Shown here: positions 25,024-64,000 of the stretch, piece after piece
Layout of the letters: each line of letters opens with the position of its first letter
How positions within the stretch are numbered: the stretch's first letter is position 1
Assembly: GCA_002269645.1 (NCBI GenBank)
Contig: NIVC01002325.1
Span: forward strand, 119,587-183,586
Length of the DNA: 64,000 bases
Direction of reading: 5' to 3'
Source: Macrostomum lignano
Lineage: Eukaryota
Made by a program: the position numbers and the translations under genes
The notes under the pieces: model-generated
Seen by the model: only the letters and a program-made list of their open reading frames with translations
Databases searched by the model: none
What the model was told of the DNA's origin: nothing

Positions 25024-25109
<86 letters not shown>

Positions 25110-27900: not shown

Positions 27901-28665
27901 GCAACCTACGCCAGCCGGGTGCCCGCCAGGGTGCTCCGCGCCCACGTGGTCCTCGGCGCCCTGCAGCTCAGCGTCGGGTTGCTCGCCATCGTTTTCAGCA
28001 TCGCGGGCGCCGTCTCGGGAGTTGGCGCCGCAGTGCAAGTCACCGCCAACGGCGTCTGGTCAGCGCCGTTTTTCATCGCGGCGGGCATCTCCGGCCTGGT
28101 GGCTGGCAAGAGCAAGCGGCGCTGCACCATGGGCTGCGTGGTCACCTGCCTGGTGTTCAGCATCCTGGCCTCCGTGTTCAGCGCCTCGGCCCTCATTCAG
28201 GAGGCCGTCGTTACGTCAGCCAACAGGGAGATTTTCCAGGCCAGGCCGAACCGCTGCCGCTACGAGCGCGACTTCAAGGTGTCGCACGCCATGGGCATCC
28301 TCTGCTGCCTGCTGTTCGCCGCGGAGTTCCTCCTGGCCATCGTGCACAGCGCCTTCGCCTGCCGCGCCTCCTGCTGCTGCGTGCCATCCGCCGCAGCCGC
28401 CAGCAGAAGCGAGCAGCAGCCGCAGGGCCCTCAGATCGTCACCATCGTGTCCCCAGACGGGCAGCAGCAGCAGCACGAAATCGTGTTCCTGCAGACCGCC
28501 TCCGACTTCGAGCCTCAGCCGGCCTTCAACCCGAGCTTCCAGCAGCAGCTGCCGAGCTTCCAGCAGGTGCTGCCGCATTCTTATGCGCAGCAGCCGCCGG
28601 GCTACGAAGAGCCGGATGCGGCGGCCGTCTCCGGAGCCCCCCAGGTGAAACAGGCTCTGCCGTGA
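27901..28665 (+). CDS. CD20/MS4A-like four-TM protein, copy A (5' end unresolved; PPGY motif in tail)
   Basis: LGALQLSVG / GVWSAPFFIAAG / CLVFSILAS / [20 protein letters not shown] match the four-TM pattern of CD20/MS4A. No in-frame ATG; an ATG at 27816 is in another frame. Confidence 0.85.
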   Translation, partial: ATYASRVPARVLRAHVVLGALQLSVGLLAIVFSIAGAVSGVGAAVQVTANGVWSAPFFIAAGISGLVAGKSKRRCTMGCVVTCLVFSILASVFSASALIQEAVVTSANREIFQARPNRCRYERDFKVSHAMGILCCLLFAAEFLLAIVHSAFACRASCCCVPSAAAASRSEQQPQGPQIVTIVSPDGQQQQHEIVFLQTASDFEPQPAFNPSFQQQLPSFQQVLPHSYAQQPPGYEEPDAAAVSGAPQVKQALP

Positions 28666-29344
28666 CGCGGACCATCTGCCATTCTGACAGCAAATTTTTT
28701 ATTTTTAAAGAGACTTATTTAGCCGTGACGCACTTGCTGCCAGTCCCCCCTGGGAGCCACAGCCAGTTTGTGTTTTAATTTGGTTTTTAGTTTTAATCAG
28801 TGGCACGGAAATACAATAGCGGGCTTTCGGCCCCGCGTGTCGAGTGTTCGACCTCGTTTTAATTGCAAGCTGACTCGATCGATGCTGCAATAATATTTCG
28901 CTAAAACTGCTGTTTGATTCGTTATTTTCTGTAAATGCGCAACTCCGAGCAGAAACAGCGAATGGCTTCACTCTTATTGCCACCAACACCTTCGACTCTC
29001 GCAATCGCGCTGAGATCACAAAATGAAGAACTTTTACGAGAAACTTCAACAGCAGGTCACTCTAGTGTAGTTGCACCTGCTCGCTTAGCGATCGCTGCTC
29101 TGCATTCTGTAAGTCTATTTATTGTTAGTCTCTATCATTTGACGGGTCTACGCTTAGCAACAGTCACAATTGCCACCCGCGCATATCGTGCGATAAGTTA
29201 AGAGACCACTTCTCACTCCCAACTCAACCCACTGGTTGCGCAACCACTTCGGTGTGCCGTAAATTGTGCGTCACTCGCAGTAAGAAGTGCGAAAAACCGT
29301 CGGCTTGTGCGTGCAGGGTGGCAGTTGTGAGCCACAATCAATTT

Positions 29345-32300
29345 TTTGTGAATTATTCCAAATTTGTGAATGATGCTCAATTTGTGAATGCTGCTCAATT
29401 TGTGAATGAAGCTCAGTTTGTGAATGATGCTCAATTTGTGAATGGTGCTCAATTTGTGAATGATTCTCAGTTTGTGAAAGATGCCCAGTTTGTGAATGAT
29501 GCTCAGTTTGTGAATGATGCTCAATTTGTGAATGGTGCTCAATTTGTGAATGATTCTCAGTTTGTGAAAGATGCTCAGTTTGTGAATGATGCTCAATTTG
29601 TGAATGGTGCTCAATTTGTGAATGGTGCTCAATTTGTGAATGAAGCTCAGTTTGTGAATGGTGCTCAATTTGTGAATGGTACTCAATTTGTGAATGATGC
29701 TCAGTTTGTGAATTATGCTCAGTTTGTGAATGATGCTAAATTTGTGAATGAAGCTCAGTTTGTGAATAGTGATCAATTTGTGAATGATTCCCAATTTGTG
29801 AATGATGCTCAATTAGTGAATGATACTCAATTTTTAAATGATACTCAATTTGTGAATGATACTCAATTTGTGAATGATGCTCAATTTGTGAATGAAGCTC
29901 AGCTTGTGAATGATGCTCAATTTGTGAATGAAGCTCAATTTGTGAATGGTGCTAAATTTGTGAATGGTGCTCAATTTGTGAATGAAGCTCAATTTGTGAA
30001 TGAAGCTCAATTTGTGAATGGTGCTAAATTTGTGAATGGTGCTCAATTTGTGAATGAAGCTCAGTTTGTGAATGGTGATCAATTTGTGAATGATTCCCAA
30101 TTTGTGAATGATGTTCAGTTTGTGAATGATGCTAAATTTGTGAATGAAGCTCAGTTTGTGAATGGTGATCAATTTGTGAATGATTCCCAATTTGTGAATG
30201 ATGTTCAGTTTGTGAATGATGCTCAATTAGTGAATGATACTCATTTTTGAATGATACTCAATTTGTGAATGATGCTCAATTTGTGAATGATACTCAATTT
30301 GTGAATGATTCCCAATTTGTGAATGATGTTCAGTTTGTGAATGATGCTAAATTAGTGAATGATACTCATTTTTGAATGATACTCAATTTGTGAATGATGC
30401 TCAATTTGTGAATGATACTCAATTTGTGAATGATGCTCAATTTGTGAATGATGCTCAGTTTGTGAATGATACTCAATTTGTGAATGATGCTCAATTTGTG
30501 AATGATACTCAATTTGTGAATGATACTCAATTTGTGAATGGTGCTCAGTTTGTGAACGATGCTCAATTAGTGAATGATACTCAATTTTTGAATGATACTC
30601 AATTTGTGAATGATGCTCAATTTGCGAATGATGCTCAATTTGTGAATGATACTCAATTTGTGAATGGTGTTCAGTTTGTGAATGATGCTCAATTTGTGAA
30701 TGATGCTCAATTTGTGAATGAAGCTCAGCTTGTGAATGATGCTCAATTTGTGAATGATACTCAATTTGTGAATGGCGCTCAATTTGTGAATGATGCTCAA
30801 TTTGTGAATGATGCTCAGTTTGTCAATGATACTCAATTTGTGAATGATACTCAATTTGTGAATGATGCTCAATTTGTGAATGATACTCAATTTGTGAATG
30901 ATACTCAATTTGTGAATGATACTCAATTTGTGAATGGTGCTCAATTTGTGAATGAAGCTCAGTTTGTGAATGGTGATCAATTTGTGAATGATTCCCAATT
31001 TGTGAATGATGCTCAGTTTGTGAATGATGCTCAATTAGTGAATGATACTCATTTTTGAATGATACTCAGTTTGTGAATGATGCTCAATTTGTGAATGATA
31101 CTCATTTTGTGAATGATGCTCAGTTTGTGAATTATGCTCAGTTTGTGAATGATGCTCAATTTGTGAATGAAGCTCAGTTTGTGAATGGTGATCAATTTGT
31201 GAATGATTCCCAATTTGTGAATGATGCTCAGTTTGTGAATGATGCTCAATTAGTGAATGATGCTCAATTTGTGAATGAAGCTCAATTTGTGAATGGTGCT
31301 CAATTTGTGAATGGTGCTCAATTTGTGAATGATGCTCAGTTTGTGAATGATACTCAATTTGTGAATGATGCTCAATTTGTGAATGATACTCAATTTGTGA
31401 ATGGTGCTCAGTTTGTGAACGATGCTCAATTAGTGAATGATACTCAATTTGTGAATGATACTCAATTTGTGAATGATACTCAATTTGTGAATGGTGCTCA
31501 ATTTGTGAATGAAGCTCAGTTTGTGAATGGTGATCAATTTGTGAATGATTCCCAATTTGAGAATGATGCTCAGTTTGTGAATGATGCTCAATTAGTGAAT
31601 GATACTCATTTTTGAATGATACTCAATTTGTGAATGATGCTCAATTTGTGAATGATACTCAATTTGTGAATGATGCTCAGTTTGTGAATTATGCTCAGTT
31701 TGTGAATGATGCTCAATTTGTGAATGAAGCTCAGTTTGTGAATGGTGATCAATTTGTGAATGATTCCCAATTTGTGAATGATGCTCAGTTTGTGAATGAT
31801 GCTCAATTAGTGAATGATACTCAATTTTTGTATGATACTCAATTTGTGAATGATGCTCAATTTGTGAATGATGCTCAATTTGTGAATGATACTCAATTTG
31901 TGAATGATTCCCAATTTGTGAATGATGTTCAGTTTGTGAATGATGCTAAATTAGTGAATGATACTCATTTTTGAATGATACTCAATTTGTGAATGATGCT
32001 CAATTTGTGAATGATACTCAATTTGTGAATGATGCTCAATTTGTGAATGATACTCAATTTGTGAATGGCGCTCAATTTGTGAATGATGCTCAATTTGTGA
32101 ATGATGCTCAGTTTGTGAATGATACTCAATTTGTGAATGATGCTCAATTTGTGAATGATACTTAATTTGTGAATGATACTCAATTTGTGAATGGTGCTCA
32201 GTTTGTGAACGATGCTCAATTAGTGAATGATACTCAATTTTTGAATGATACTCAATTTGTGAATGATGCTCAATTTGCGAATGATGCTCAATTTGTGAAT

Positions 32301-35300
32301 GATACTCAATTTGTGAATGGTGTTCAGTTTGTGAATGATGCTCAATTTGTGAATGCTGCTCAATTTGTGAATGAAGCTCAGCTTGTGAATGATGCTCAAT
32401 TTGTGAATGATACTCAATTTGTGAATGGCGCTCAATTTGTGAATGATGCTCAATTTGTGAATGATGCTCAGTTTGTCAATGATACTCAATTTGTGAATGA
32501 TACTCAATTTGTGAATGATGCTCAATTTGTGAATGATACTCAATTTGTGAATGATACTCAATTTGTGAATGATACTCAATTTGTGAATGGTGCTCAATTT
32601 GTGAATGAAGCTCAGTTTGTGAATGGTGATCAATTTGTGAATGATTCCCAATTTGTGAATGATGCTCAGTTTGTGAATGATGCTCAATTAGTGAATGATA
32701 CTCATTTTTGAATGATACTCAGTTTGTGAATGATGCTCAATTTGTGAATGATACTCAATTTGTGAATGATGCTCAGTTTTTGAATTATGCTCAGTTTGTG
32801 AATGATGCTCAATTTGTGAATGAAGCTCAGTTTGTGAATGGTGATCAATTTGTGAATGATTCCCAATTTGTGAATGATGCTCAGTTTGTGAATGATGCTC
32901 AATTAGTGAATGATGCTCAATTTGTGAATGAAGCTCAATTTGTGAATGGTGCTCAATTTGTGAATGGTGCTCAATTTGTGAATGATGCTCAGTTTGTGAA
33001 TGATACTCAATTTGTGAATGATGCTCAATTTGTGAATGATACTCAATTTGTGAATGATACTCAATTTGTGAATGATACTCAATTTGTGAATGGTGCTCAA
33101 TTTGTGAATGAAGCTCAGTTTGTGAATGGTGATCAATTTGTGAATGATTCCCAATTTGTGAATGATGCTCAGTTTGTGAATGATGCTCAATTAGTGAATG
33201 ATACTCATTTTTGAATGATACTCAATTTGTGAATGATGCTCAATTTGTGAATGATACTCAATTTGTGAATGATGCTCAGTTTGTGAATTATGCTCAGTTT
33301 GTGAATGATGCTCAATTTGTGAATGAAGCTCAGTTTGTGAATGGTGATCAATTTGTGAATGATTCCCAATTTGTGAATGATGCTCAGTTTGTGAATGATG
33401 CTCAATTAGTGAATGATACTCAATTTTTGTATGATACTCAATTTGTGAATGATGCTCAATTTGTGAATGATACTCAATTTGTGAATGGCGCTCAATTTGT
33501 GAATGATGCTCAATTTGTGAATGATGCTCAGTTTGTGAATGATACTCAATTTGTGAATGATACTCAATTTGTGAATGATGCTCAATTTGTGAATGATACT
33601 CAATTTGTGAATGATACTCAATTTGTGAATGGTGCTCAGTTTGTGAACGATGCTCAATTAGTGAATGATACTCAATTTTTGAATGATACTCAATTTGTGA
33701 ATGATGCTCAATTTGTGAATGATGCTCAATTAGTGAATGATACTCAATTTTTGTATGATACTCAATTTGTGAATGATGCTCAATTTGTGAATGATACTCA
33801 ATTTGTGAATGATGCTCAATTTGTGAATGATACTCAATTTGTGAATGGCGCTCAATTTGTGAATGATGCTCAATTTGTGAATGATGCTCAGTTTGTGAAT
33901 GATACTCAATTTGTGAATGATACTCAATTTGTGAATGATGCTCAATTTGTGAATGATACTCAATTTGTGAATGATACTCAATTTGTGAATGGTGCTCAGT
34001 TTGTGAACGATGCTTAATTAGTGAATGATACTCAATTTTTGAATGATACTCAATTTGTGAATGATGCTCAATTTGTGAATGATGCTCAATTTGTGAATGA
34101 TACTCAATTTGTGAATGGTGCTCAGTTTGTGAACGATGCTCAATTAGTGAATGATACTCAATTTGTGAATGATGCTCAATTTGTGAATGATGCTCAATTT
34201 GTGAATGATACTCAATTTGTGAATGGTGCTCAGTTTGTGAATGATGCTCAATTTGTGAATGATGCTAAATTTGTGAATGAAGCTCAGCTTGTGAATGATG
34301 CTCAATTTGTGAATGAAGCTCAATTTGTGAATGGTGCTAAATTTGTGAATGGTGCTCAATTTGTGAATGATGCTCAGTTTGTGAATGATACTCAATTTGT
34401 GAATGATACTCAATTTGTGAATGATGCTCAATTTGTGAATGATACTCAATTTGTGAATGATACTCAATTTGTGAATGGTGCTCAGTTTGTGAACGATGCT
34501 CAATTAGTGAATGATACTCAATTTTTGAATGATACTCAATTTGTGAATGATGCTCAATTTGTGAATGATGCTCAATTTGTGAATGATACTCAATTTGTGA
34601 ATGAAGCTCAGCTTGTGATAATGCTCAATTTGTGAATGAAGCTCAATTTGTGAATGGTGCTAAATTTGTGAATGGTGCTCAATTTGTGAATGAAGCTCAA
34701 TTTGTGAATGGTGCTCAATTTGTGAATGAAGCTCAGTTTGTGAATGGTGATCAATTTGTGAATGATTCCCAATTTGTGAATGATGCTCAGTTTGTGAATG
34801 ATGCTCAATTAGTGAATGATACTCATTTTTGAATGATACTCAATTTGTGAATGATGCTCAATTTGTGAATGATACTCAATTTGTGAATGATGCTCAGTTT
34901 GTGAATTATGCTCAATTTGTGAATGATGCTCAATTTGTGAATGAAGCTCAGTTTGTGAATGGTGATCAATTTGTGAATGATTCCCAATTTGTGAATGATG
35001 CTCAGTTTGTGAATGATGCTCAATTAGTGAATGATACTCAATTTTTGTATGATACTCAATTTGTGAATGATGCCCAATTTGTGAATGATACTCAATTTGT
35101 GAATGATGCTCAATTTGTGAATGATACTCAATTTGTGAATGATACTCAATTTGTGAATGGTGCTCAGTTTGTGAACGATGCTCAATTAGTGAATGATACT
35201 CAATTTTTGAATGATACTCAATTTGTGAATGATGCTCAATTTGCGAATGATGCTCAATTTGTGAATGATACTCAATTTGTGAATGGTGTTCAGTTTGTGA

Positions 35301-35634
35301 ATGATGCTCAATTTGTGAATGATGCTCAATTTGTGAATGAAGCTCAGCTTGTGAATGATGCTCAATTTGTGAATGATACTCAATTTGTGAATGGCGCTCA
35401 ATTTGTGAATGATGCTCAATTTGTGAATGATGCTCAGTTTGTCAATGATACTCAATTTGTGAATGATACTCAATTTGTGAATGGTGTTCAGTTTGTGAAT
35501 GATGCTCAATTTGTGAATGATGCTCAATTTGTGAATGAAGCTCAGCTTGTGAACGATGCTCAATTAGTGAATGATACTCAATTTTTGAATGAAGCTCAAT
35601 TTGTGAATGATGCTCAATTTGTGAATGATGCTTA
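29345..35634. repeat. 6.3-kb 18-bp satellite (TTTGTGAATGATGCTCAA)n with higher-order structure; one + frame reads (FVNDAQ)n
   Basis: About 350 units; diagnostic variants recur with ~1.65-kb spacing (TTTGCGAAT at ~30622 and ~32276). Confidence 0.97.
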
Positions 35635-35906
35635 ATTCAAGAGTCGTTTGCTCATTTCCCCCAGCAGTGACCATCACCATTGAGCAGCAGCATCTTTGTG
35701 GCCCAGGCAGTTCTGTGAGCCCGGCTGACGTGTAGAATCACCACCTAAAGCCAAATTAACAAAGACCCGTAAATGCAGCGGCAAACTTCAATAGAAATTC
35801 TCCAATCAGTTGAAAAATGCTGGGCGCCAGTCCAGAGGCGGTCAAGTGTATTCACAGCTTACTCCAGGTGGACATGGCACTGATAAGAACACCCCACTAA
35901 GGCCAG

Positions 35907-37660
35907 TTAAATGCTGATGGTCTTGAAGATGTTGAGGCCGTCCAGCGCGGTGCTGAGCACCAAGCCGGGAAGCTGCGGGTGCCAGTGTCCCTCCTTCATC
36001 TCCTGCTGGCCCATATGGATGAACAGCAGCTGCGGCGGCAGACCGGCTGTCGAGACGCCTTCGCAGGCGAGGTCCCACAGCGTCAGCTGGTTGTCCTCGG
36101 AGGTGGCCAGGAACACCGAGCTGTCCGTGGGGTGCCACTGCACCGAGGTGATCGGGCCCTTGTGGTAACTGCGGGTGGGGCGGTGTTGCGGTACATGTCG
36201 GTAGCCAGGGATAAGCAGCACTACCTGATATTGGGAAGGCACAACCCGATATTGGGGAGGCACTACCTGATGTTGGGGAGGCACAACCTGACATTGGGGA
36301 GGCACTACCTGATGTTGGGGAGGCACTACCTGATGTTGGGGAGGCACTACGAGCTACCTGATGTTGGGGAGGCACTACCTGATGTTGGGGAGGCACTACC
36401 TGATGTTGGGGAGGCACTACCTGATGTTGGGGAGGCACTACCTGATGTTGGGGAGGCACTACCTGATATTGGGGAGGCACTACCTGATGTTAGGGAGGCA
36501 CTGCCTGATTCGGGCACCCAGCAGCCAAGCTGCACCCACCTGAGTTCGCAGGCAGGCGGCGCCTCGCTGGCGAAGCGGCGCAGGTCCCAGACGCGCAGAG
36601 CGCAGTCGTCGCCGCCGCTGACGATGTACTGGGACTCCAGCCGGTTCCAGGCGATGACGTTCACGTCGCTGCCGTGGCAGTCCGGCCGGGTCAGCATGCA
36701 GGCCTTGTCGGGCTTGGCGCGCACGTCGAACACGCGGAGGCTGCGGTCGACGGAGCAGCCGGCCAGCACGCTGGCCTCGGTGGGCGACCACTGCAGGTCC
36801 TCCACCGAGCCGCTGTGGCCGGCCAGCGGCCGCGGGTCCACCCGCCAGCCGGCGCCGCCCTCGGCCGGCTGCCAGACGTGGATGGCGCCGGTGCAGTCGC
36901 CGCTGGCCAGGCGGCCGGGCACCAGGCGGCTCCAGTCCAGCCCGAAGCCCTCGGCCGAGTGGCCGCGGAAGGCGAACAGCGGCGCGGGCGACTCTGGCCG
37001 GCGGGTGAACTCGGTCAGCAGGTGGTGGTCGGCCACGGCGGTCAGGGCCTCGGTCAGGTCGAAGATGTACACAGCGCCCGCCTCAGACCAGGTGGCCGCC
37101 AGCGGCCGGCCCGTAACGTCCGAGGCTCGAATCCGGTTGACCGTCCGGTTGTGGCGGAGCTGCGCCACGGACACGTCGCCGCGTCGGTCCGCCCCCTCCT
37201 CGTCCGAGTCGTCTTCTGAGTCGGAGTCCTCGCCGTCCTCGCCGTCCTCGCCGTCCTCGCCGGCGCGCCGGCGCCGCATGGGGAACAGGCCGGCGGCGCG
37301 CATCACACAGACAGCGTTGCGGCCGGCCTCGGGGGCCTGCGTGCCGCACACCAGGAAGCAGCTCAGCGACCGCTCGGCGTCGTCAAAGTCGAAGGCGGCA
37401 CCACTGGCTGCGTTCTCCGGGTCGGGCAGCACATCGATGCTCAGGCAGGGCCACTCCACGCTCATCTGGTAGTACAGCTTGTAGGCCGTGCGGTCCATCA
37501 CCAGCTCCTCGTCCGGCCCGGGCTGCGGGTCGCCGCTGTTCGGCAGGTAGGGCCGCGCCGGCTCCTGCGGCTCCCCCTCTTCTGCCTCCTCGTCCAGCAT
37601 CTCCTCGTCATCACTGCCCTCTGCATCCTGCTGCTGCTCCGCGTCTCCTTCAGTTGTCAT
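35907..37660 (-). CDS. GRWD1: Glutamate-rich WD40 repeat protein 1 (Rrb1), two exons 37660..36540 and 36168..35907, 460 aa
   Basis: ELVMD..AY..Y....EWPCLSIDV, acidic loop, GHSAEGFGLDWS, GHSGSVEDLQWSP, HPTDSSVF..TSEDNQLTLWDL, LPPQLLFIHMGQ. GT..AG intron 36539..36169 restores the frame. Confidence 0.95.
36215..36510. repeat. 21-bp minisatellite inside the GRWD1 intron (GAGGCACTACCTGATGTTGGG)
   Basis: About 13 units within the 371-bp intron. Confidence 0.95.
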
Positions 37661-38805: not shown

Positions 38806-39991
38806 TCATTTTTCATCAGCCACTTCGGAGTAGGGCGGCGGCGGCGGCGGCGGCTCCAGCGGGTCGGCAACAGGCGAGTACGGCGGCGGCTCCAGCGGTC
38901 GGGGCTGCGGGATTCGCAGCGACAGCGGCTCGGCCGAGGCCTCCGTGACGGCCGCCAGGCTGAGGCCGCCAGCCCGCCGTTCAGAGAGGAGCCGCCGGTA
39001 GAAGCCGAGCAGGCAGACGAGCTGCGCAGTGGACAGCAGCAGCGACAGGCACTCCACGACCGTCTTGGCCACGCCCAGGTAGAACACCGCCAGATAGGCC
39101 TGCAGACATGCCAGATTGGTAGGTCACATTTGTTTCAAGCTGCAGATCACACTTGACCCAAACAGCCAAAACCCAAACCCAAACAACTCTTAAGTGACGA
39201 CTTAAGAGACGTGGCAGATTACACCAGGTTCAAGCGGCAGGTCACACCTGGTTCATGTGACAGATCACATCTGGATTAAGCCGTATGTAACACCTGACTC
39301 AAGTAGATCACACCTGCTCAAGCAGATCACACCTGCTCAAGCAGATCACACCTGCTCAAGCAGATCACACCTGCTCAAGCAGATCACACCTGCTCAAGCA
39401 GATCACACCTGCTCAAGCAGATCACACCTGCTCAAGCAGATCACACCTGCTCAAGCAGATCACACCTGCTCAAGCAGCAGATCACACCTGCTCAAGCATA
39501 TCACACCTGGCTCAAGCATATCACACCTGGCTCAAGCAGATCACACCTGGCTCAAGCGGCAGATCACATCAGGTTAAAACGGCAGGTCACAGGCACAAAA
39601 CGAGTCGCACCTGCTCCCGCATCCGCATGCGAGTTCGCTCGTAAAGGCGCCGATTTTCGGCCAGAGTGGCCGCCTCAGCGGTGGCCGCAGCCGTCGTCAC
39701 CAGGAGGGCCGCAGCGGCGACCAGTCCGGCCGCCAGGCAGCGCCGGCGCAGCCGGTGGCGGGCGGTGGCGGCGGAGACGGCGAGGCCGCCAGACAGCAGC
39801 AGGACGGCGCCGCACCAAAGTCCGGTGCCGCGGATGGCGCAGCCGGAGCGCATGACGATGGCGAGGACCTCCAGCAGGGCCAGCGAGCAGCCGCAGAGCA
39901 CCGCCAGGGTGCCGAAATTCTTGTGCGCGCTGCGCTGCCTGACGGGGAACTGAGGCTCCTCAAGCATGACGGAACCTCCCTGCGGTGGCAT
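38806..39991 (-). CDS. Divergent MS4A-like four-TM protein, copy B; exons 39991..39611 and 39099..38806, ~224 aa, two PPPY motifs
   Basis: GTGLWCGAVLLLSGG and EAATLAENRRLYE (cf. [13 protein letters not shown] in copy F). Phase-0 GT..AG intron 39610..39100; TM4 lies in exon 2. Confidence 0.8.
39295..39570. repeat. 19-bp minisatellite inside the copy-B intron (GCAGATCACACCTGCTCAA)
   Basis: About 14 units. Confidence 0.95.
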
Positions 39992-41131: not shown

Positions 41132-42142
41132 TTATGGAGTCGGCCGGACCTTTTCAGCCTCACCAGCGCTCTGTTCGTACGGTGGAGGACAATCCGCGAA
41201 TTGATAGGCGCTTGAGCCGGCCTGCTGACCCGGATACCCGGCCTGCTGACCCGGATACCCGGCCTGCTGACCCGAATACCCGGCCTGCTGACCCGGATAC
41301 CCGGCCTGCTGACCCGGATACCCGGCCTGCTGACCCGGATACCCGGCCTGCTGACCCGGATACCCGGCCTGCTGACCCGGATACCCGGCCTGCTGACCCG
41401 GATACCCAGCCTGCTGACCCGGATACCCGGCCTGCTGACCCGGATACCCGGCCTGCTGACCCGGATACCCGGCCTGCTGACCCGGATATCCGGGCTGAGC
41501 CAAATAGATGACCTGCTGCGGCTGCTGGGAGCTTGCAACAGGCGGCACGCAGCAGCAGGAAGCGCGGCAGGCGAAGGCGGAGTGCACGATGGCCAGCACA
41601 AAGTCCAAGGCGCACAGCAGCGCGCAAACGACGCTGATGGCGTAGGCCTTGCGGAAGGCGACATCGACGTCATCGCGGGAGCCGCTGGTCGCGGTGTACT
41701 GATCCATCAGGTGCTGATTGAATACCGAAGTGACAGAGCTAGAGACCATGGCGAAGAAAGCCGCAACAGAGGCGATGATGGAGAGCACCAGGCAGGTGAT
41801 CACGCAGCCCAGGGCGCAGCCGCAGCCATTGCGGGCAGCCGACATTCCGGAGATGCCAGCGGCCATGACAAACGGGCCGGTCCAGAGGCCGGCGGAGGAA
41901 ACCCGAAAGTAGTAATACCCGCGCCTCTTCATCACAATGCTGAAGCCGTCGGCCAGGCCAAAAATGCCGATGACTAAGAGCAGACCGCCTGTCAGCAGCT
42001 GCAGTAAGCCCATGATGCGGTGGCCCCGCAGCACCCAGGGCGGCAGTCGGCTGGCATAGTTTGTGGGGCCGCTCGGGGCAGCCGGTGCCCCAGTCACCAC
42101 CTGCGGCGTCACGAGAGGCACCGCCTGACTCTGTGGCTGCTG
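41132..42142 (-). CDS. MS4A-like four-TM protein, copy C, with 13 x GYPGQQA and PPPY; no local start codon
   Basis: Intact ORF with four TM segments and [12 protein letters not shown]; the coding exon starts after a pyrimidine tract + CAG at 42143. Confidence 0.87.
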
Positions 42143-42589
42143 CTGCGGGAGATGGGGCGGAGCATGGATAGACTGGGTTGGCTCGCTACTGTTAGTGCTG
42201 ACCTGCTGAGTGAATCTGCACTGCCACCTCCCGCCCTCTGGACTCAGTGACTGCCTAAAGTAAAAATCCCAAATAACCTCGCCCACTCTCACTATCTCAA
42301 ACCTCATATCTCATTGTTGCACTTGATCTCAATCTCAACCGCATAATACATGAGTCATATGAGTCTAATAGAACATGATGCTTGAGAACAGCGAAGTAAC
42401 AGCTGAAAACAGGATATATTAATTGATAAACAGAAAGCAAAGCAAATTAAGTTAAATTGGGCGCAGCTTAAAAGCAGCTGAGCAAAATGAATGCGAATAA
42501 ATAATGCGAGAACAGGGCTTCTCGGAAGAGTGGGCGAAATTTTGAATGCAATGTAATACGGTAAGACATAAATAACCTGCTGGAATGCC

Positions 42590-43551: not shown

Positions 43552-43925
43552 TTGCGGCGGTCACCCCTCAGAAGCCATGGCGGAGAAGGCGGTCAGACAG
43601 GTAGCAACGATGGACAGCCCCAGGCAGGTGACCACGCAGCCCAGGGTGCAGCGGCAGGCCTGCCTTGAAGCCATGAATCAGGAGATGCTGGCGCCGATGA
43701 AGAACGGACAGGCCCAGATTCCGCTGCCGAACAGGCTGAACTCGCCTCCAGCGTATTTGAGCTTCATCTTCTTGACGGTGTCGATGCTCAGGCCCACCTC
43801 GCTGAAGATGATGGTGAGGGCGCCGGTCACCAACTGGATGATGCCCATGTGATGATGCTCCTATTGTTGCCGGACGCCTCCGTGTCTGAGGGCGCCACCA
43901 TCACAACCCGCGGCGCAGGCTGCTC
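43552..43925 (-). pseudogene. MS4A-like pseudogene, copy D (TM1-TM3 only)
   Basis: MGIIQLVTG, SGIWACPFFIGASIS* (in-frame TGA) and [10 protein letters not shown]; frameshift before TM1 and truncation after TM3. Confidence 0.85.
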
Positions 43926-45153: not shown

Positions 45154-46260
45154 TCACTTCCGAGCAGCTTCTGCCATGCTGGCCTCGTACGATGGCGGCG
45201 CATCCGGGATCCGGCCGCCCGTGGAGCTGCCCTGCGGACCCGGATATCCGCCCTGAGGACCCGGATATCCAGCCTGAGGACCCGGAAATCCGCCCTGAGG
45301 ACCTGAATATCCAGCCTGAGGCCCCGGATATCCAGCCTGAGGACCCGGATATCCAGCCTGAGGACCCGGATATCCAGCCTGAGGACCCGGATATCCAGCC
45401 TGAGGACCCGGATATCCAGCCTGAGGACCCGGATATCCAGCCCGAGGACCCGGATATCCGCCTTGAGGACCCGAATATCCAGCCTGAGGACCCGGATACC
45501 CAGTCTGAGGACCCGGATACCCGGCCTGCGGACCCGGATACCCAGTCTGAGGACCCGGATATCCAGCCTGTTGACCCGGATACCCGGCCTGTGGACCTGA
45601 ATACCCGGCCTGCGGGCCAGAGGAACTTCCAGGCTGGTTGGTGACCACATGCTGCTGATGCTGCCGCTGCTGTGTCTCGCTGCTTACAGCCGATGGCACA
45701 CAGCAGCAGGAGGCACAGCAGGCGAAGGCGGAGTGCACGCTGGCCACCGCCAGCTCGATGCCGCAGAGCAGCGCGCACACGATGCCGGTGCTGTAGACGA
45801 CGTGGTAGGCGGTGAAGTCGCTGCCGCTGCCAGCATTCTCATACAGGGTGCGGTTCTGCGCGACCGCAAACGCCTCCGTGATGATGGCAGAGAAGGCGGA
45901 GACGGCGGCGAGGATGGACAGCACGAGGCAGGTGACCACGCAGCCCAGGGGGCAGCAGCAGCCTGGGCGGGAGGCGATGATGCCGGAGATGCCGGCGGCT
46001 ATGAAGAACGGGCCGGCCCTGACGCCGCTGCCAAGCTGGCTCAGCTCGCTCTCGGCGCCGCTGTCTTTGTCCACCATCTTCTTGTCGGTGCCGATGACCA
46101 GACCGGCGATGCTGACGCCCATGGCGAAGATACCGACCAGCACCTGAATGATGCCCATGATGCGGAGGCCGCGCAGCACCCGAGCCGACACGCGGTCCAG
46201 GTAGTTGCCGGGGGTCGCCACCCGCGTGCCCGGCTGTTGAAGCTGATGTGACTGCTGCAT
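45154..46260 (-). CDS. MS4A-like four-TM protein, copy E, 368 aa, ~18 x GYPGPQA and PPSY
   Basis: Intact ORF; [45 protein letters not shown]. Confidence 0.88.
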
Positions 46261-47042: not shown

Positions 47043-48035
47043 TCAAAATTTCACCGCGTGACCTTCAATGCTGGATTCATAGGGCGGCGGAGCTGTGCTG
47101 CTGCCGGCCTGCGGACCCGGATACCCGGCCTGCGGACCCGGATACCCGGCCTGCGGACCCGGATACCCGGCCTGCTGACCCGGATACCCAGCCTGCTGAC
47201 CCGTATACCCGGCCTGCGGACCCGGATACCCAGCCTGCGGACCCGGATACCCGGTCTGCTGGACAGGATACCCGGGTGGCGGTGGGTGGCCTGACTGAGG
47301 AGCAAAGATGACCTGCTGGCCAGGGTAGACTACGACCTGGCCAGGGTAGGGCCCTGCATGCTCCGTGACGTAGGCGCGCTGGCCGGTCATGAAAACCTGC
47401 TGGTGCGGCTGCTGCTGGTTGCTCACAGCTGATGGCACGCAGCAGCAGGAGGCGCGGCAGGCGAAAGCGGAGTGCACGATGGCCAGCACGAACTCGAAGG
47501 CGCACAGCAGCACACAGGCGATGCCGGTACCGTACACGGCCCGAAAGACGTCTTCAGAGCTGCTACTTGAGTACGACTTGGAGTACTCGTACATTCTGCG
47601 GTTCTCAGCAGCCACAATGGCCTCGGTGACCATGGCGGAGAAGGCCAAGACCGAGGCGATGATGGAGAACACCAGGCAGGTGACCACGCAGCCCAGGGTG
47701 CAGCCGCCACCGGGACGACCTGCCGAGAGCCCGGAGATGCCGGCAGCGATGAAGAACGGGCCGGACCAGACGCCGCCGCCGACCAGGCTGAACTGAGTCG
47801 ACAGGCCGTACCGAGTGATGATTTTCTCGCCAGAGCCGACGGCCAGGCCCGCAATGTTGATGATGATGACGAGAGCGCCAGTCAGCAGCTGCAGGAAGCC
47901 CATGATGCGGTGGGCCCGCAGTACCGAAGGCGGCACGCGGCTCGCGTAGCTGCCAGGGGCCGCGGCAGAGGGTGGCGCCACCACCTGCGGCACTGGTGAC
48001 ACCCCGGGGCCAGGCTGTTGCTGTGGCTGCTGCAT
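47043..48035 (-). CDS. MS4A-like four-TM protein, copy F, ~330 aa, 8 x GYPG(P/Q)QA and PPPY
   Basis: Intact ORF from ATG 48035 (MQQPQ); [14 protein letters not shown] and [20 protein letters not shown]. Confidence 0.88.
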
Positions 48036-58936: not shown

Positions 58937-59348
58937 CTACTTGTGCTGTCTGAGTTGCTGGGCGGCGGCAACATCAAGGCAAATTACCATGAAAAAAGCA
59001 GAAAGCAGCAGAAACAGGCCGCATCCAAAAGAGAGCGCAGCAGGGACCTCGCTTAAGTCTCCCCGGCCGACAACGCCAGGTAGGCAGACTCCGATAGCCG
59101 GCAGGTTGAGCAGCAGGCCGCAGACCCAGTAAGCCGGGGATGGAGCTGCGCTGCTTCAAAACTCGCCACGCAGCCGCGATGCCCAAGGCCGAAGTCACCG
59201 CGATGACGGGGCTGCTCCAGTAGACGGCCGGAACGCCAGAGCCGTCAGTCGCGCACCAGATGCACGCGGCGAACAGGACCCAAGCCACGATAAACTGCTG
59301 CCCGTACCAAAACATGCTTCTTATCATGTAGGTCCTGGTGGCCACCAT
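58937..59348 (-). CDS. Small divergent four-TM protein, copy G (possible MS4A-like); one frameshift at ~59137
   Basis: Four hydrophobic segments if one C is removed from a C4 run (…SSIPAYWVCGLLLNL…LFLLLSAFFMVICLDV…HK*); YWSSPVIAVTS resembles TM2. CAG acceptor 2 nt before the ATG. Confidence 0.5.
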
Positions 59349-60275: not shown

Positions 60276-60391
60276 ATGTCTATTTATAGCAATCAGATGT
60301 GTTACAAACACGTGGTATGTCTATTTATAGCAATCAGATGTGTTACAAACACGTGTATGTCTATTTATAGCAATCAGATGTGTTACAAACA
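60276..60391. repeat. ~40-bp tandem repeat x 3
   Basis: GTATGTCTATTTATAGCAATCAGATGTGTTACAAACAC. Confidence 0.9.
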
Positions 60392-61389
60392 CGGCCGGTC
60401 GGCGGTCGCCCGATCCCACAGACGCAGGTGTCATCTTTAGTAAGTAGAAAAAACATTTTAGTATATTGGATAACCTAGATAGGTTTAAATAAACTGTAGA
60501 CGGGTTTCGTGTTAAATCAATGAAGAAGAGTCACGCCGTGGTTTGCCTTCGCTTTGCTTCTTTTATTGCTTGAGTTGTCTTGAGTGTAGAAGAGGGTAAG
60601 CGAGAGAAAATGCTAGCCAGCTGCTGCGTACTTATCATTTATTTTTGGCCTTCCGGAAATTTCTAAATTATTTGAGTACAGTAAAACATTCTACACTTGG
60701 TATTGTTTGTACAGTATTCATATCAAGTATGATGATAAATAACAGTAATTAAATAAATATCGAGTTATTACAAAACCCCATGCGAGCGTATAACATCTGC
60801 ACCAGAAGCAATCAAGCACTGAAGAGCATCAAATAAACATTGGATCTACATCTACAAATGTACTACAGAAAGAAACGATACAATGCACTGCAAGCTATTC
60901 ACACAAGAAATATTTTCCTTTCTTTCATTAGGCTCAAGATGCTCAAAAGACGTCTTTTTCGTCTGTCGTTAGATAAATAACATCAATAGCTGCGATTTTA
61001 GATATTGAATCATAATGTTGTGATTGGGATCCGTTGTAAAGACGCCACTCCGAATCACTCGTATCAACTAAATAGGTTGACCAAACTCTTTACATCTACA
61101 TAGATTTACTTATGAAAAGAAATGGCTTATTCAGAGTACATGCAATTATGCACAGTATAAAATAACATTCAGGCTTCAGCCTAGTATGCACGTTCATGTA
61201 CACTCGGACACATCCATCTCTGTAAGAGTTCAGACTGCCTTCTGAAGAGGTTGAGATTCTGGCTGATGCTGCTGAACCTGTTGGTAAGTTCGAGAAGCCG
61301 ATGCCGCATTGGCGGCCGAAAAGTAGGCCTTGATAGGGCGATAGCAAAGCTGCGTCCTTATGAGGTTATGAGATCAATGTGCGGCTGGT

Positions 61390-61690
61390 TCATCCGCTGC
61401 TGCATGCACTGCTGCTGCTGCGTGGCTGGCTGTATTTGCAGCAGCAGGAGGCGCGGCAGACGTTGCAACTGTGCACCAAGGCGATGACCAGGCCGAAGGC
61501 TAGCAGCAGGAGCAGATCAGGCTGGTTGCAGGCAGCGACTCGACGATCATGGCGGTGAAGGCCATGAGAGCGTTCAGGCAGCTCAGCACCAGGCAGGCCA
61601 CCACGCCGCACTTTGTGCCGGCACGCCGGCCAGCAGTAAGAAGGTCTGACGTCAGACCAGACGCCACCGGCCGCCAGCGAGCATCCGTTG
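61390..61690 (-). pseudogene. Degraded MS4A-like fragment, copy H
   Basis: GGVWS, CGVVACLVLS and LVIALVHSCNVCRASCCC lie in different frames, with internal deletions. Confidence 0.7.
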
Positions 61691-61913
61691 CCGATGCCCG
61701 AGCGGAGTATCGCTTAGGTGTAGCTCTGAGCTCAGTTGTGGTAGCTCAGGTGTGGTACTCATGATGGTAGCTCAGGTGTGGTGCTCATGATGGTAGCTCA
61801 GGTGTGGTGCTCATAATAATAGCTCAGGTGTGTGATGCTCGTGATGGTAGCTCAAGTAGCTCAGACCAAGTACGTAGCTGGGGGAGGCTGCTTGCTGTCC
61901 CCGCCACAATTTA

Positions 61914-62478
61914 TCAGTGGCTGCTGCTGCTGGAAGCCGCCAAGAGGCTGCAGCTGCACCTGGAAGGCCGGCTGCTGGTCGCGGCTCCGTCATGGGGCAC
62001 GAGCTGCACCTGGTACCGCGGCCGGTCGGACTGGGAGACGCAGCCGGCGGCGGTGCGGATGTGACTCACACCGAATGCCAGCTGCAGCAAGCAAGAAATG
62101 ATGACCAGCAAGAGCAGGACTGCGCTGCGGATGTACAGCACCCGGAATGCCGTTGGCGAACTCACGCTGCCTCGGGGCCTACGTAGTTCTTCTCATTCTT
62201 GCCCGGGAACAGCTGCACCAGCCAGAAGGCGGCGCCGCAGCACAGCAGGATGGCGATGCCGCTGATGGCGACGCTGACGACGAAGTTGCAACGCACGCAG
62301 GTGTGCCGCAGTCCGGCCACAATGGCCGCCGCGCCAGACAGAACCACCGCGGGGCCGCACACGCAGCCGCTGTAGGCGGACAGGTAGCGCTCGTCCTGCC
62401 GCATCGACACGCTGCCGAGGCTCAGCGAAGCAGCACACAGCCAACCAGGATCTCTATGGAGCACAGATCACGTGAGCC
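61914..62478 (-). CDS. Divergent MS4A-like gene or pseudogene, copy I, with a 41-bp intron (62165..62125)
   Basis: AHVI-CSIEILVGCV (needs two 1-bp fixes), YLSAYSGCVCGPAVVLSG, and TM4 joined in frame by GTGAGT..CCGCAG splicing. Confidence 0.5.
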
Positions 62479-63356
62479 TGGGAGCCCGTCGGCCTCTCCG
62501 GCATCTCCACGGTGGGGTTGTCGGCCTCAGCCATGCTGGACAGGGCTGGAATGGTTGGGTAATGTTTGATAGCACTCTGCTTGGCACTCTATCTGGCACT
62601 CTGTCTGGCACTCTGCCCGGCACTCTGTCTGGCACTCGATCTAGCACTCTGCCTAGCACCTATGCAGCACTCTGTTGGGGACTCTACCTAGTTATCTGCA
62701 CAGCACTCCTCTAGCACTCTGTCTTGAAGGCCCTCCTCTATCTTACACTCTGCCTAACACTATCTACTACTCATTTCTATCTACTACCACTCTACCCATC
62801 AAACCACTCCATCTACTCCTCTATCTAGCTCTCTACCTTGTCATCTATTTACCATTTTGTCTATCTAGCACAGAGGATTCTGACGGGCAGGTAAAAATTG
62901 ATGAAGCAGCATCAAATTATAACCTATTGTTGATAATAGGTAAAAAAGCAGTGCTAGAGTTTTATCTAGAAGGTTATAGGTTATAATATAGCTTGTTAAT
63001 GGCGTTGGCTGCAATTAACGCCATTGAGAGGGCCAACCACCAAGGCACAGTGAAGTGTACATGCCTAACGATAAATAAAGTTAGGACCGCTTATATATTA
63101 ATGCATTAACATCAGAATAAAATTAAAATTCGAAAAAAAAGATTTTTCTATTTAAAATCTAAACGGAATCACGGAATGTGCAAGACACTCAGAAATAGAC
63201 AGATGGCCTGATTTTAAGTGCGAGTAGCGATGTAATAAGAGATTCTCACTGCCGAATAGAGTCGGACAGACAGGCACTCAGCAGTACTAAAAGTTTCCGG
63301 TCAGATTTCTAATAATAAATAAATCGATATTCGCTGTTCTTTGTTCGAGCAATTCA

Positions 63357-64000
63357 CTAAAAACGGTGAACTCGTTGACAGGTGTTGCTTCTGCTAGCAG
63401 CGGACAGCGCCGCCGCGTCACACCGGCTGCAGCAAGCGCACGTCCGAGTCCGCCTGCGGCTCCGTCCCGGCGTCAGGAAGTCCGTCAGCGGCTGCCTGTC
63501 GGGCTCCTCGGCCACGCAGCAGCAGGAGGCGCGGCAGGCGAAGGCGGCCTGCACGATGGCCACCACCAGGCCGAGCAGGAACACTAGGAACCAGAGCACA
63601 TCGGCCAGCGTGAAGTACACCGGAAACATTGCTGTTACAGTCCCCGGCATGACCCCGACCTGCGCCGCCATCACGGAGCCCATTACGATGGCCACCACCG
63701 ACACCATGGCGGAGATGACACTGAGCCACCAAACAGCCGATGATGCAGCAGAAGGTGAGCACGCGGCCCTTGCCGGCCAGCAGTCCGAAAGTCCCGGCCG
63801 AGATGAAGAACACGCCGGTCCAGAACCCCGCGTACATGTTCGGGTTCACCGAGTAGTCATGCGCCAGCCGGCTGTAGATGTTCAGAAAGATAAGCAGGCA
63901 TCCCACGGTGATTTGGATGGCGCCCATGATCACGTGAGCTCTGAGGACGCTGGCCGGCAGCAGCTTGGCGTAGCGGCTGAGGGCGGGACCGCTCGGCGAT
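63357..64000 (-). CDS. MS4A-like four-TM protein, copy J (5' end outside window; one frameshift at ~63727)
   Basis: RYAKLLPASVLRAHVIMGAIQITVG, YAGFWTGVFFISAG, CLV-LSVISA (one extra G), [13 protein letters not shown]. Confidence 0.8.

What the first reader, a model, noticed from the sequence alone, without database searches (positions are those of the whole stretch)
27901..64000. Tandem birth-and-death cluster of about 10 CD20/MS4A-like four-TM genes in an invertebrate
Seen: copies A-J share the TM1 LG.lQ...G, TM2 G.W.GPFFI.AG and TM4 E..[16 protein letters not shown] signatures but diverge strongly in the extracellular loops (TM1-2 and TM3-4). Intact, frameshifted and decayed copies coexist, and the cluster runs off the window. 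Established: vertebrate MS4A genes form tandem clusters acting as immune-receptor subunits, ion-channel-like proteins and non-GPCR chemosensors of necklace olfactory neurons. Inference: an independent expansion that may be an uncharacterised chemosensory or immune recognition repertoire.
Basis: partly seen in the sequence, partly recalled or inferred. Interest (0 to 1): 0.75.

Follow-up and report, generated by a model that had tools for sequence, protein, structure and literature searches.

The report
Flatworm cluster of MS4A/CD20-like membrane genes
The window is the end of a Macrostomum lignano (flatworm) contig and carries a real cluster of about nine small four-helix membrane-protein genes distantly related to vertebrate CD20/MS4A; this is a modest lineage-specific addition to a known superfamily, and the "frameshifted" copies look like sequencing errors.

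Summary
Between 27.8 kb and 64.0 kb there are nine loci of one four-transmembrane family. A, C, E and F have full-length reading frames. B is a divergent two-exon gene and G2 is a divergent member. H runs off the contig end. D and G are half-gene relics.

The CD20/MS4A assignment is supported, though not by a direct Pfam pass. PF04103 is the best hit but stays below its cut-off (10.6-25.9 vs 27.9 bits). A profile of the copies finds 170 proteins, and 91 of 100 tested are Pfam CD20. Their joint profile hits FcεRIβ (3.7e-22) and CD20 (5e-12). The AlphaFold model best matches FcεRIβ (TM 0.72/0.78).

Corrections:
- The window is the last 64 kb of M. lignano contig NIVC01002325.1.
- The whole cluster is mirrored on that contig.
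- The frameshifts in H, G2 and G are window-unique 1-bp indels with no substitutions, so they are probably consensus errors.

The family is small (about 8 distinct types). It has no ITAM and shows no clear positive selection.

The cytosolic side is conserved: a post-TM4 Cys cluster and a C-terminal PPxY. This points to palmitoylated proteins sorted through NEDD4-type ligases. A chemosensory or immune role remains speculation. Ciona MS4A clusters are a published precedent.

The parts
27817..28665 (+). Copy A. Complete four-TM core (27907-28386), Cys cluster 28360-28380, PPGY 28594-28605. It has no in-frame ATG; CTG stands where the singleton paralog P0002 has ATG.
   Evidence: The mirror-arm copy A' is the same and also lacks an ATG.
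38806..39967 (-). Copy B, a divergent two-exon member. Exon 1 (39611-39967) carries TM1-3. A 511-nt intron contains a 19-bp array. Exon 2 (38806-39099) carries TM4 and two PPPY motifs. There is no Cys cluster.
   Evidence: The called gene model was reconstructed. Exon 1 scores 48 bits against the family profile A2 and 17 bits against Pfam CD20. The spliced protein gives no Pfam hit. B falls outside the main M. lignano clade.
41132..42307 (-). Copy C, intact ORF of 391 aa. Core 41543-42058, Cys cluster 41549-41569, 13 GYPGQQA heptads (21-bp array 41217-41497), PPPY 41177-41188.
   Evidence: Pfam CD20 19.3 bits. The mirror copy C' (P0001) differs mainly in the TM1-2 loop and has 5 heptads.
43564..43860 (-). 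Copy D, a decayed relic. Only TM1 to TM3 remain, with an in-frame stop, and the copy is then truncated.
   Evidence: The same 56-aa stub is called in both arms.
45154..46260 (-). Copy E, intact ORF of 368 aa. Core 45694-46203, Cys cluster (CCASCCC) 45700-45720, 18 heptads (array 45231-45612), PPSY 45187-45198.
   Evidence: This copy gives the best direct Pfam CD20 score, 25.9 bits.
47043..48032 (-). Copy F, intact 329-aa gene (= P0003). Core 47433-47948, Cys cluster 47439-47459, 7 heptads (array 47104-47275), PPGY 47268-47279, PPPY 47079-47090.
   Evidence: AlphaFold models were built on this core.
61393..61745 (-). Copy G, a relic with TM3, TM4 and the Cys cluster only. In the window it is split over two frames by a window-unique 1-bp deletion at 61511.
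   Evidence: The mirror arm reads it in one frame as a 92-aa ORF.
61857..62408 (-). Copy G2, a divergent and weakly matching member. In the window it is broken by window-unique 1-bp indels (62172, 61979). In the mirror arm it is an intact ORF of 181-183 aa.
   Evidence: The mirror product scores 21.5 bits (E 2e-5) against profile A2.
63418..64000 (-). Copy H. Its 5' end is cut by the contig end. There are two window-unique 1-bp indels (+G at 63727, -C at 63478). It has the Cys cluster but no PPxY.
   Evidence: Intact sister copies are P0006 (mirror arm, 197-199 aa) and P0153.
36347..37660 (-). An unrelated gene lying inside the cluster: a GRWD1/RRB1-like WD40 protein (CAF1C_H4-bd plus WD40).
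   Evidence: It is called as a 457-458-aa gene in both arms.

Best explanation
Shown. This is a lineage-specific cluster of CD20-like/MS4A-superfamily genes of the flatworm Macrostomum lignano.
- Each full copy encodes a compact four-helix membrane bundle.
- Directly after TM4 comes a near-invariant cysteine cluster, C(R/C)ASCCC.
- The tail that follows is disordered and rich in Pro, Gln and Tyr. In C, E and F it is built from a 21-bp coding minisatellite (GYPGQQA heptads).
- In five of the nine loci (A, B, C, E, F) the tail ends in, or B's tail contains, a PPxY motif.

Inferred.
- N and C termini are cytosolic, as in CD20 and FcεRIβ.
- The Cys cluster is S-palmitoylated and anchors the start of the tail to the membrane.
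- The PPxY motif, and perhaps the YP-rich heptads, recruit WW-domain HECT ubiquitin ligases of the NEDD4 family.
- Through this coupling, surface abundance and endosomal sorting of the protein and of whatever it partners with are controlled by ubiquitination.
- The two fast-diverging extracellular loops give each paralog a different extracellular or partner specificity.
- The proteins therefore most likely act as small auxiliary or scaffolding subunits, as non-sensory vertebrate MS4As do for other receptors, rather than as autonomous channels.

The cluster grew by old tandem duplication. Homology between units is limited to the CDS, at about 70-72% nucleotide identity. The cluster was later copied again by large segmental duplication, giving a mirror arm on the same contig.
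For: Identity of the DNA:
- 100% match to NIVC01002325.1 of assembly GCA_002269645.1.
- The closest proteins are M. lignano hypothetical proteins.

Family assignment:
- Pfam CD20 is the top hit for A, C, E, B and H.
- A profile of the copies retrieves 170 proteins at E<=1e-3 from 1.84 billion.
- 91 of 100 of these are Pfam CD20, best E 8.7e-50.
- They include Ciona 'membrane-spanning 4-domains subfamily A member 8'.
- The joint profile hits FcεRIβ at 3.7e-22 and CD20 at 5e-12 to 3e-11 among PDB sequences.
- The AlphaFold model has pLDDT 87.7 and pTM 0.85. Its best Foldseek matches are FcεRIβ chains, at TM 0.72/0.78 and rmsd 3.9 Å.

Cytosolic motifs:
- The Cys cluster is 94% identical among paralogs.
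- Cx(1-4)CC occurs in 91 of 100 homologs.
- PPxY occurs in 53 of 100 homologs, against 5.3 expected from shuffles; 44 of these lie in the last 40 residues.
- PPxY is present in A, B, C, E and F.
- That PY motifs bind NEDD4-family WW domains is established knowledge (e.g. PMC8509885, PMC2824488, listed).

Expansion:
- NJ clade of the M. lignano copies.
- CDS-only homology between units.
- Mirror arm.

Transcription:
- The deposited annotation is transcriptome-derived (PMC5730564), and gene models exist for C', F, E, B and H'.
Against: - No window protein reaches Pfam's gathering score.
- Foldseek E-values are only about 3e-3, because four-helix bundles are generic.
- H and its sister copies lack PPxY, and B lacks the Cys cluster, so neither motif is universal.
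- Palmitoylation, membrane topology and WW-domain binding are inferred from motifs only. No tool here tests them.
- No vertebrate MS4A that I know of uses a PY motif, so the analogy to MS4A function is loose.
- Copy A has no start codon in frame.
Confidence: 0.6

Rival explanations
1. One reading: a chemosensory receptor repertoire. Each paralog would be a ligand-binding MS4A-type chemoreceptor, with loops tuned to different cues, expressed in sensory or epidermal cells as in mouse necklace olfactory neurons or Ciona palps.
For: The genes are clustered and the loops are the most divergent parts. The two arm copies C and C' differ mainly in the TM1-2 loop. There is a published precedent: ascidians have clustered, lineage-specifically expanded MS4A genes. 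Ciona has 29. Some are enriched in palp cells, and positively selected extracellular sites were found in Botryllus (bioRxiv 10.1101/2022.08.15.492342).
Against: The repertoire is small, about 8 distinct types in the species. Loop dN/dS is 0.43-1.5 with saturated, poorly alignable loops, and pS is raised there too, so there is no demonstrable diversifying selection. There are no expression data. The conserved trafficking-type cytosolic motifs are shared with homologs across phyla, which argues for a general cell-biological role.
Confidence: 0.15
2. An immune-receptor signalling subunit like FcεRIβ (MS4A2). The proteins would pair with a ligand-binding receptor and signal through tyrosine motifs in the tail.
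For: FcεRIβ is the closest solved structure and the best PDB sequence match of the family profile. The tails are tyrosine-rich.
Against: No ITAM (YxxL/I-x6-9-YxxL/I) occurs in A, C, E or F. The tyrosines sit in GYPGQQA or PPxY contexts. No partner receptor is known in flatworms.
Confidence: 0.05
3. Not MS4A at all. On this view the resemblance is convergent similarity of transmembrane helices, as Zuccolo et al. 2010 argued for invertebrate 'MS4A-like' genes, and the family belongs elsewhere (for example MARVEL, as UniRef labels P0002 and P0004).
For: Every window protein is below the Pfam CD20 cut-off. A profile of the six closest sequences finds no MS4A chain in the PDB by sequence. Zuccolo et al. 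concluded that invertebrates lack MS4A-like genes (PMC2826416).
Against: The homology chain is strong and covers all four helices. Window profile to invertebrate CD20-domain proteins gives E down to 1e-15. 91 of 100 of those are Pfam CD20. Their profile to FcεRIβ gives 3.7e-22 and to CD20 5e-12. There is no Pfam MARVEL hit in any copy or in 100 homologs. FcεRIβ is the only high-TM structural match; the others have TM of about 0.3-0.5.
Confidence: 0.05
4. The apparent birth-and-death dynamics are largely an assembly artefact. The palindromic contig end would be a mis-assembly of a long-read hairpin or of collapsed homeologous copies, and the true genome would hold one simpler cluster.
For: The arm copies differ by 0 substitutions and 11 one-base indels over the terminal 3.65 kb. 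The window ends exactly at the contig end. The assembly is PacBio/Canu/Pilon with 180 Mb of >=95% identical duplicated blocks, from a neopolyploid line (PMC5730564; PMC10733133).
Against: Elsewhere the arms truly differ. The C/D/E region is 94-97% identical, with substitutions and different repeat numbers, and the 18-bp array is 6.3 kb against less than 1 kb. A third, clearly diverged copy of the H-G segment lies at the other end of the contig, with 16 substitutions in 3.65 kb. This rival concerns copy number only and does not touch the identity of the genes.
Confidence: 0.3

Closest known systems
Vertebrate MS4A family (CD20/MS4A1, FcεRIβ/MS4A2; Pfam PF04103 CD20-like)
   Same: Both have a four-helix bundle of about 160-170 residues. 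Both carry the TM1 'LG..Q(I/L)..G' and TM2 'W.G..F(I).(A/S)G' signatures, a short TM2-TM3 turn, and variable TM1-2 and TM3-4 loops. Both occur as clustered paralogs. FcεRIβ is the best structural and PDB-sequence match.
   Different: Sequence identity is only about 17-18%. The window proteins fall below Pfam's cut-off when scored singly. They lack an ITAM and a conserved ECL2 disulfide. Instead they carry a post-TM4 CxxSCCC cluster, minisatellite-encoded GYPGQQA tails and a C-terminal PPxY. As far as I know, none of these features is found in vertebrate MS4As.
Ascidian (Ciona, Botryllus) MS4A clusters
   Same: These are invertebrate CD20-like genes in tandem clusters with lineage-specific expansion and divergent extracellular regions. 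Ciona proteins are direct hits of the window profile (P0014 at 1e-10, P0017 at 5.8e-10). P0017 also has the Cys-rich TM4 exit and a C-terminal PPDY.
   Different: Ciona has 29 genes and some expression evidence in palp cells. The flatworm set is smaller, protostome, and has no expression or selection evidence.
PY-motif membrane adaptors and substrates of NEDD4-family ligases (NDFIP1/2, LAPTM4/5, PLSCR-type Pro-rich tails)
   Same: These are small multi-pass membrane proteins whose cytosolic Pro/Tyr-rich tails carry PPxY motifs. Juxtamembrane cysteine clusters are typical palmitoylation sites. This comparison rests on my own knowledge.
   Different: There is no sequence homology. The resemblance is functional, at motif level only, and binding is untested.

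Membership tests
CD20-like / MS4A superfamily (Pfam PF04103) | A single sequence scores above Pfam's gathering threshold (27.9 bits) | tested here: not met
   Scores are A 17.9, C 19.3, E 25.9, F 10.6, B exon 1 17.2 and the H fragment 18.6 bits. CD20 is the top family for all but F.
CD20-like / MS4A superfamily (Pfam PF04103) | Profile-level homology to accepted members over all four helices | tested here: met
   Profile A1 finds 170 hits. 91 of 100 are Pfam CD20, best E 8.7e-50. Profile A2 hits FcεRIβ at 3.7e-22 and CD20 at 5e-12.
CD20-like / MS4A superfamily (Pfam PF04103) | Four-TM helical bundle superposable on solved MS4A structures | tested here: met
   The model has pLDDT 87.7. The best hit is 8y81_B (FcεRIβ), TM 0.72/0.78, rmsd 3.9 Å; 8k7t_B gives 0.69/0.74. 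Foldseek E-values are only about 3e-3.
CD20-like / MS4A superfamily (Pfam PF04103) | Both termini cytosolic | not testable with these tools
   This is inferred from basic residues before TM1 and after TM4, and from cytosolic-type motifs (Cys cluster, PPxY) in the tail.
Vertebrate MS4A clade proper (orthology) | Nests within, or as sister to, vertebrate MS4A in a phylogeny that includes TMEM176 and sarcospan | not tested
   No vertebrate sequences were available for a tree. The NJ tree used invertebrate hits only.
FcεRIβ-type signalling subunit | ITAM in the cytosolic tail | tested here: not met
   A regex for YxxL/I-x6-9-YxxL/I finds nothing in A, C, E or F.
MS4A chemoreceptors | Diversifying selection in extracellular loops | tested here: inconclusive
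   Loop dN/dS is 0.43-1.5, but loop pS is also 0.46-0.70 and the alignment there is poor.
MS4A chemoreceptors | Expression in sensory cells and ligand-evoked responses | not testable with these tools
   No expression or functional data were reachable. The literature searches found nothing on flatworm MS4A.
MARVEL domain (Pfam PF01284), the UniRef label of P0002 and P0004 | Match to the MARVEL profile | tested here: not met
   No MARVEL hit at E<=1 in the window proteins, and none at E<=1e-3 in 100 homologs.
PY-motif clients or adaptors of NEDD4-family ligases | [LP]PxY motif in a cytosolic segment | tested here: met
   The motif is present in A, B (two copies), C, E and F (two copies). It is ten-fold enriched in homologs and concentrated at the C-terminus. 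It is absent from H.
PY-motif clients or adaptors of NEDD4-family ligases | Physical binding to WW domains and ubiquitin-dependent sorting | not testable with these tools
   This needs an experiment.

The most novel reading that the evidence does not exclude
The ancestral metazoan MS4A-like protein would have been a palmitoylated membrane adaptor coupled to NEDD4-type ligases through a PY motif. That architecture would survive in spiralians, echinoderms and tunicates and would have been lost in vertebrate MS4As. The flatworm cluster would use this chassis, with rapidly diversifying loops and expandable minisatellite tails, as a recognition repertoire for chemical cues or microbes.
Probability: 0.12. 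Interest if true: 0.6.

Novelty: new member of a known kind. Interest (0 to 1): 0.3.

Why it matters
The cluster extends clearly homologous CD20-like/MS4A genes to a flatworm. Together with the annelid, nemertean, crinoid and tunicate hits, this contradicts the older conclusion that invertebrates lack MS4A-like genes (PMC2826416).

The conserved Cys cluster plus C-terminal PPxY gives a concrete, testable handle on what non-vertebrate MS4A-like proteins do. M. lignano is transgenic-tractable, so reporters and knock-downs are feasible.

Practically, the analysis flags three problems in the deposited assembly. The contig end is palindromic and indel-ridden. At least one deposited gene model (copy A') is in the wrong frame. 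Apparent pseudogenes here should not be taken at face value.

Tried and rejected
- The word-indexed homolog search with one copy, and then with an 8-sequence profile, found only M. lignano proteins. It was too insensitive for distant relatives.
- A PDB sequence search with the 6-sequence profile gave only chemokine-receptor noise at E>0.1. The link to MS4A appeared only with the 100-sequence profile.
- Spliced copy B gave no Pfam hit at E<=0.1, although its exon 1 alone scores 17 bits and scores 48 bits against the family profile.
- ORF 58974-59348, which looks hydrophobic, is not a member.
- Pairwise NG86 dN/dS by region was uninformative. The loops are saturated or misaligned, and pS differs between regions.
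- The first NJ attempts failed: one timed out and one gave NaN distances. The Poisson-distance tree was used, and its support is only moderate.
- I looked for a splice or trans-splice rescue of copy A's missing ATG. The obvious AG acceptor upstream would not put a leader-supplied AUG in frame, so this was left open.
- Literature searches for MS4A/CD20 in Macrostomum or flatworms, and for an MS4A-PPxY/NEDD4 link, found nothing relevant.
Full report
**Source of the window**

The window matches record positions 119,587-183,586 of contig NIVC01002325.1 at 100% identity. This contig (183,586 bp) belongs to the Macrostomum lignano Mlig_3_7 assembly, GCA_002269645.1. The window's last base is therefore the contig's last base. 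The nearest database proteins are M. lignano hypothetical proteins. The assembly was built from PacBio reads with Canu and polished with Pilon. It comes from a neopolyploid line and contains 180 Mb of duplicated blocks at >=95% identity (PMC5730564; PMC10733133).

**Checking the observation**

tblastn with the four long ORFs, and HMM scans of all six frames, find one paralogous family only between about 27.8 kb and 64.0 kb. I count nine loci.

| Locus | Coordinates (strand) | State |
|---|---|---|
| A | 27817-28665 (+) | full four-TM core; no in-frame ATG |
| B | 38806-39967 (-) | divergent, two exons, 511-nt intron |
| C | 41132-42307 (-) | full-length ORF |
| D | 43564-43860 (-) | N-terminal half, in-frame stop |
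| E | 45154-46260 (-) | full-length ORF |
| F | 47043-48032 (-) | full-length ORF |
| G | 61393-61745 (-) | TM3-TM4 only |
| G2 | about 61857-62408 (-) | divergent, weak match |
| H | 63418-64000 (-) | cut by the contig end |

The B gene model was reconstructed.

The loops are indeed the divergent parts. Mean pairwise identity among A, C, E and F is 48-68% in the four helices and 94% in the Cys cluster. It is 20% in the TM1-2 loop and 24% in the TM3-4 loop.

Only about 6.6 kb of the 36.1-kb interval codes for the family. The rest is minisatellite arrays, including a 6.3-kb 18-bp array, and an unrelated GRWD1-like WD40 gene at 36347-37660.

**The 'frameshifted' copies**

The contig carries a giant inverted duplication.
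- Within the window, 1-10230 mirrors 26673-16936 at about 99% identity.
- The duplication continues outward, so F', E', D', C', B', GRWD1' and A' lie left of the window.
- H', G2' and G' lie further left.
- A third, diverged H copy (P0153) and another paralog (P0151) lie near the start of the contig.

I aligned the terminal 3.65 kb three ways.
- The window differs from its mirror arm by 11 single-base indels and no substitutions.
- The mirror arm has no unique differences.
- The third copy has 16 substitutions.
- Every frameshift in H (63727, 63478), G2 (62172, 61979) and G (61511) is one of the window-unique indels.
- In the mirror arm, H is an intact 197-aa ORF, G2 an intact ORF of 181-183 aa, and G reads in a single frame.

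The frameshifts are thus best explained as residual long-read consensus errors at a contig end, not as pseudogenisation.

Genuine decay remains for D and G, which are half genes in both arms. It may also apply to A. In both arms A has CTG where the singleton paralog P0002 has its ATG.

The arms are not identical everywhere. The C/D/E region is 94-97% identical. C and C' differ chiefly in the TM1-2 loop, and heptad numbers differ: 13 against 5 in C, and 18 against about 13 in E. At least part of the duplication is therefore real.

**What the genes are**

Scored singly, the proteins have Pfam CD20 (PF04103) as the top hit for every copy except F, but they miss the 27.9-bit cut-off, scoring 10.6-25.9 bits.

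A profile of the six closest sequences was searched exhaustively against 1.84 billion representatives. It returned 170 proteins at E<=1e-3, most aligned across all four helices. Of 100 of these, 91 match Pfam CD20, best E 8.7e-50, and none matches MARVEL.

Named members include:
- Ciona 'membrane-spanning 4-domains subfamily A member 8';
- uncharacterised proteins of Owenia (annelid), Lineus (nemertean) and Anneissia (crinoid).

The 100-sequence profile, which includes copy F, hits FcεRIβ/MS4A2 at 3.7e-22 and CD20 at 5e-12 to 3e-11 among PDB sequences. The next hit is a tetraspanin at 1.5e-3.

AlphaFold2 on copy F gives pLDDT 77.6 with 6 sequences and 87.7 (pTM 0.85) with 100 sequences. Foldseek ranks FcεRIβ chains first with both models. 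For the better model the values are TM 0.72/0.78 and rmsd 3.9 Å. The E-values, about 3e-3, are modest, as expected for a four-helix bundle. All other hits have TM of about 0.3-0.5.

I conclude that the family is a divergent branch of the CD20-like/MS4A superfamily. The 2010 conclusion that invertebrates lack MS4A-like genes (PMC2826416) does not hold against profile and structure evidence.

- Directly after TM4 comes C(R/C)ASCCC, the most conserved segment of the protein. Cx(1-4)CC occurs in 91 of 100 homologs.
- The tails of C, E and F are encoded by in-frame 21-bp minisatellites that give GYPGQQA-type heptads (13, 18 and 7 units).
- A, C, E and F end in PPxY, and B has two PPPY motifs.
- PPxY occurs in 53 of 100 homologs, against 5.3 expected from shuffling, and 44 of these lie within the last 40 residues.
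- There is no ITAM.
- PY motifs are the canonical ligands of NEDD4-family WW domains (PMC8509885 and PMC2824488, listed).
- Juxtamembrane cysteine clusters are typical S-acylation sites. This last point rests on my own knowledge.

**Mechanism proposed**

Shown: a four-helix MS4A-type bundle, a conserved Cys cluster, a Pro/Tyr-rich tail with PPxY, variable loops, clustering, and a lineage-specific clade.

Inferred:
- The termini are cytosolic.
- The Cys cluster is palmitoylated.
- The tail recruits NEDD4-type HECT ligases, so abundance and endosomal sorting of the protein and its partners are ubiquitin-controlled.
- The loops confer paralog-specific extracellular or partner recognition.

I put about 0.9 on the family assignment and about 0.45 on the PY/palmitoyl trafficking mechanism. 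For the combined statement I give 0.6.

**Expansion and selection**

In an NJ tree of 64 family members the M. lignano copies A, C, E, F, P0002, H, P0004 and P0010 form one clade. Bootstrap support is 69% for the first five, 60% with H and P0004 added, and 38% for all. B falls elsewhere.

Homology between tandem units is confined to the CDS at about 70-72% nucleotide identity, so the tandem duplications are old.

The species has only about 8 distinct 90%-identity types.

Region-wise NG86 estimates give dN/dS of 0.56-0.89 in the helices and 0.43-1.5 in the loops. Synonymous divergence is also higher in the loops (pS 0.46-0.70 against 0.25-0.40). This could reflect gene conversion in the helices or misaligned loops. 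There is no defensible signal of diversifying selection.

**Comparison with what is known**

The closest known kinds are vertebrate MS4A proteins, with FcεRIβ the nearest solved structure, and the clustered, lineage-expanded ascidian MS4A genes. For the ascidian genes, palp expression and positively selected extracellular sites have been reported (bioRxiv 10.1101/2022.08.15.492342).

No paper in the searchable library links MS4A/CD20 to flatworms or to PY motifs.

The finding is therefore a new member of a known kind. The gene family and the clustered organisation are both precedented. New here are a protostome flatworm instance and the recognition of a conserved Cys-cluster/PPxY tail in the non-vertebrate branch. 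Chemosensory or immune roles remain speculation.

**Verdict**

Interest is modest, at 0.3.

Noticed in passing
window 1-26673 (arms 1-10230 and 16936-26673; spacer 10231-16935): There is a large inverted duplication at about 99% identity. Its spacer holds gypsy-like LTR-retrotransposon pol ORFs (RT, RNase H, integrase; 10320-13259). The duplication extends beyond both arms, so the whole 27.8-64 kb cluster is mirrored left of the window on the same contig.
   Followed up: partly
window 60355-64000: This stretch has 11 window-unique single-base indels and no substitutions relative to the mirror arm. That is a signature of unpolished long-read consensus at the contig end. Any ORF here is unreliable.
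   Followed up: yes
window 29345-35637: A 6.3-kb array of an 18-bp unit (about 350 copies, TTTGTGAATGATGCTCAA). The corresponding interval in the mirror arm is under 1 kb, so the array length differs greatly between the two copies or was collapsed in assembly.
   Followed up: partly
window 36347-37660 (-): A GRWD1/RRB1-like WD40 gene (CAF1C_H4-bd plus WD40 repeats) sits between copies A and B. Downstream of its WD40-coding part lies a 21-bp repeat array (36218-36509).
   Followed up: no
window 41217-41497, 45231-45612, 47104-47275: In-frame 21-bp coding minisatellites encode GYPGQQA-type heptads in the tails of C, E and F. Copy number differs between the nearly identical arm copies (C 13 vs 5; E 18 vs about 13). 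The arrays of C and F are more alike (about 93%) than the rest of their CDS (about 72%).
   Followed up: partly
window 27678-28778 (+) and L007 17038-18126: The deposited gene model for the mirror copy of A (363 aa) corresponds to the alternative-frame Arg/Pro/Ala-rich ORF, not to the four-TM frame. The likely reason is that the true frame lacks an ATG. This is probably a wrong-frame annotation.
   Followed up: partly
cores of A, C, E and F (27907-28386, 41543-42058, 45694-46203, 47433-47948): Synonymous divergence is markedly lower in the TM-coding segments (pS 0.25-0.40) than in the loop-coding segments (0.46-0.70). This could be gene conversion among paralogs, codon constraint in the helices, or loop misalignment.
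   Followed up: no
window 699-1361 (-) and 25313-25975 (+): An identical 220-aa Ser/Glu/Arg-rich ORF with no recognised domain is present once in each arm of the inverted duplication. A 253-aa gene is called there in the deposited annotation (L007 19991-20752).
   Followed up: no
P0002, P0004 (UniRef entries A0A267...): UniRef names these paralogs 'MARVEL domain-containing protein'. No Pfam MARVEL hit is found in any copy or in 100 homologs, so the label looks wrong.
   Followed up: yes
window 42595-43167, 44003-44560, 46306-46460, 48175-49266, 56211-58136: Each intergenic space of the cluster is filled by a different minisatellite (42-, 40-, 25-, 29- and 20-bp units, at 89-96% matches). It is unclear whether these arrays promote the duplications.
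   Followed up: no
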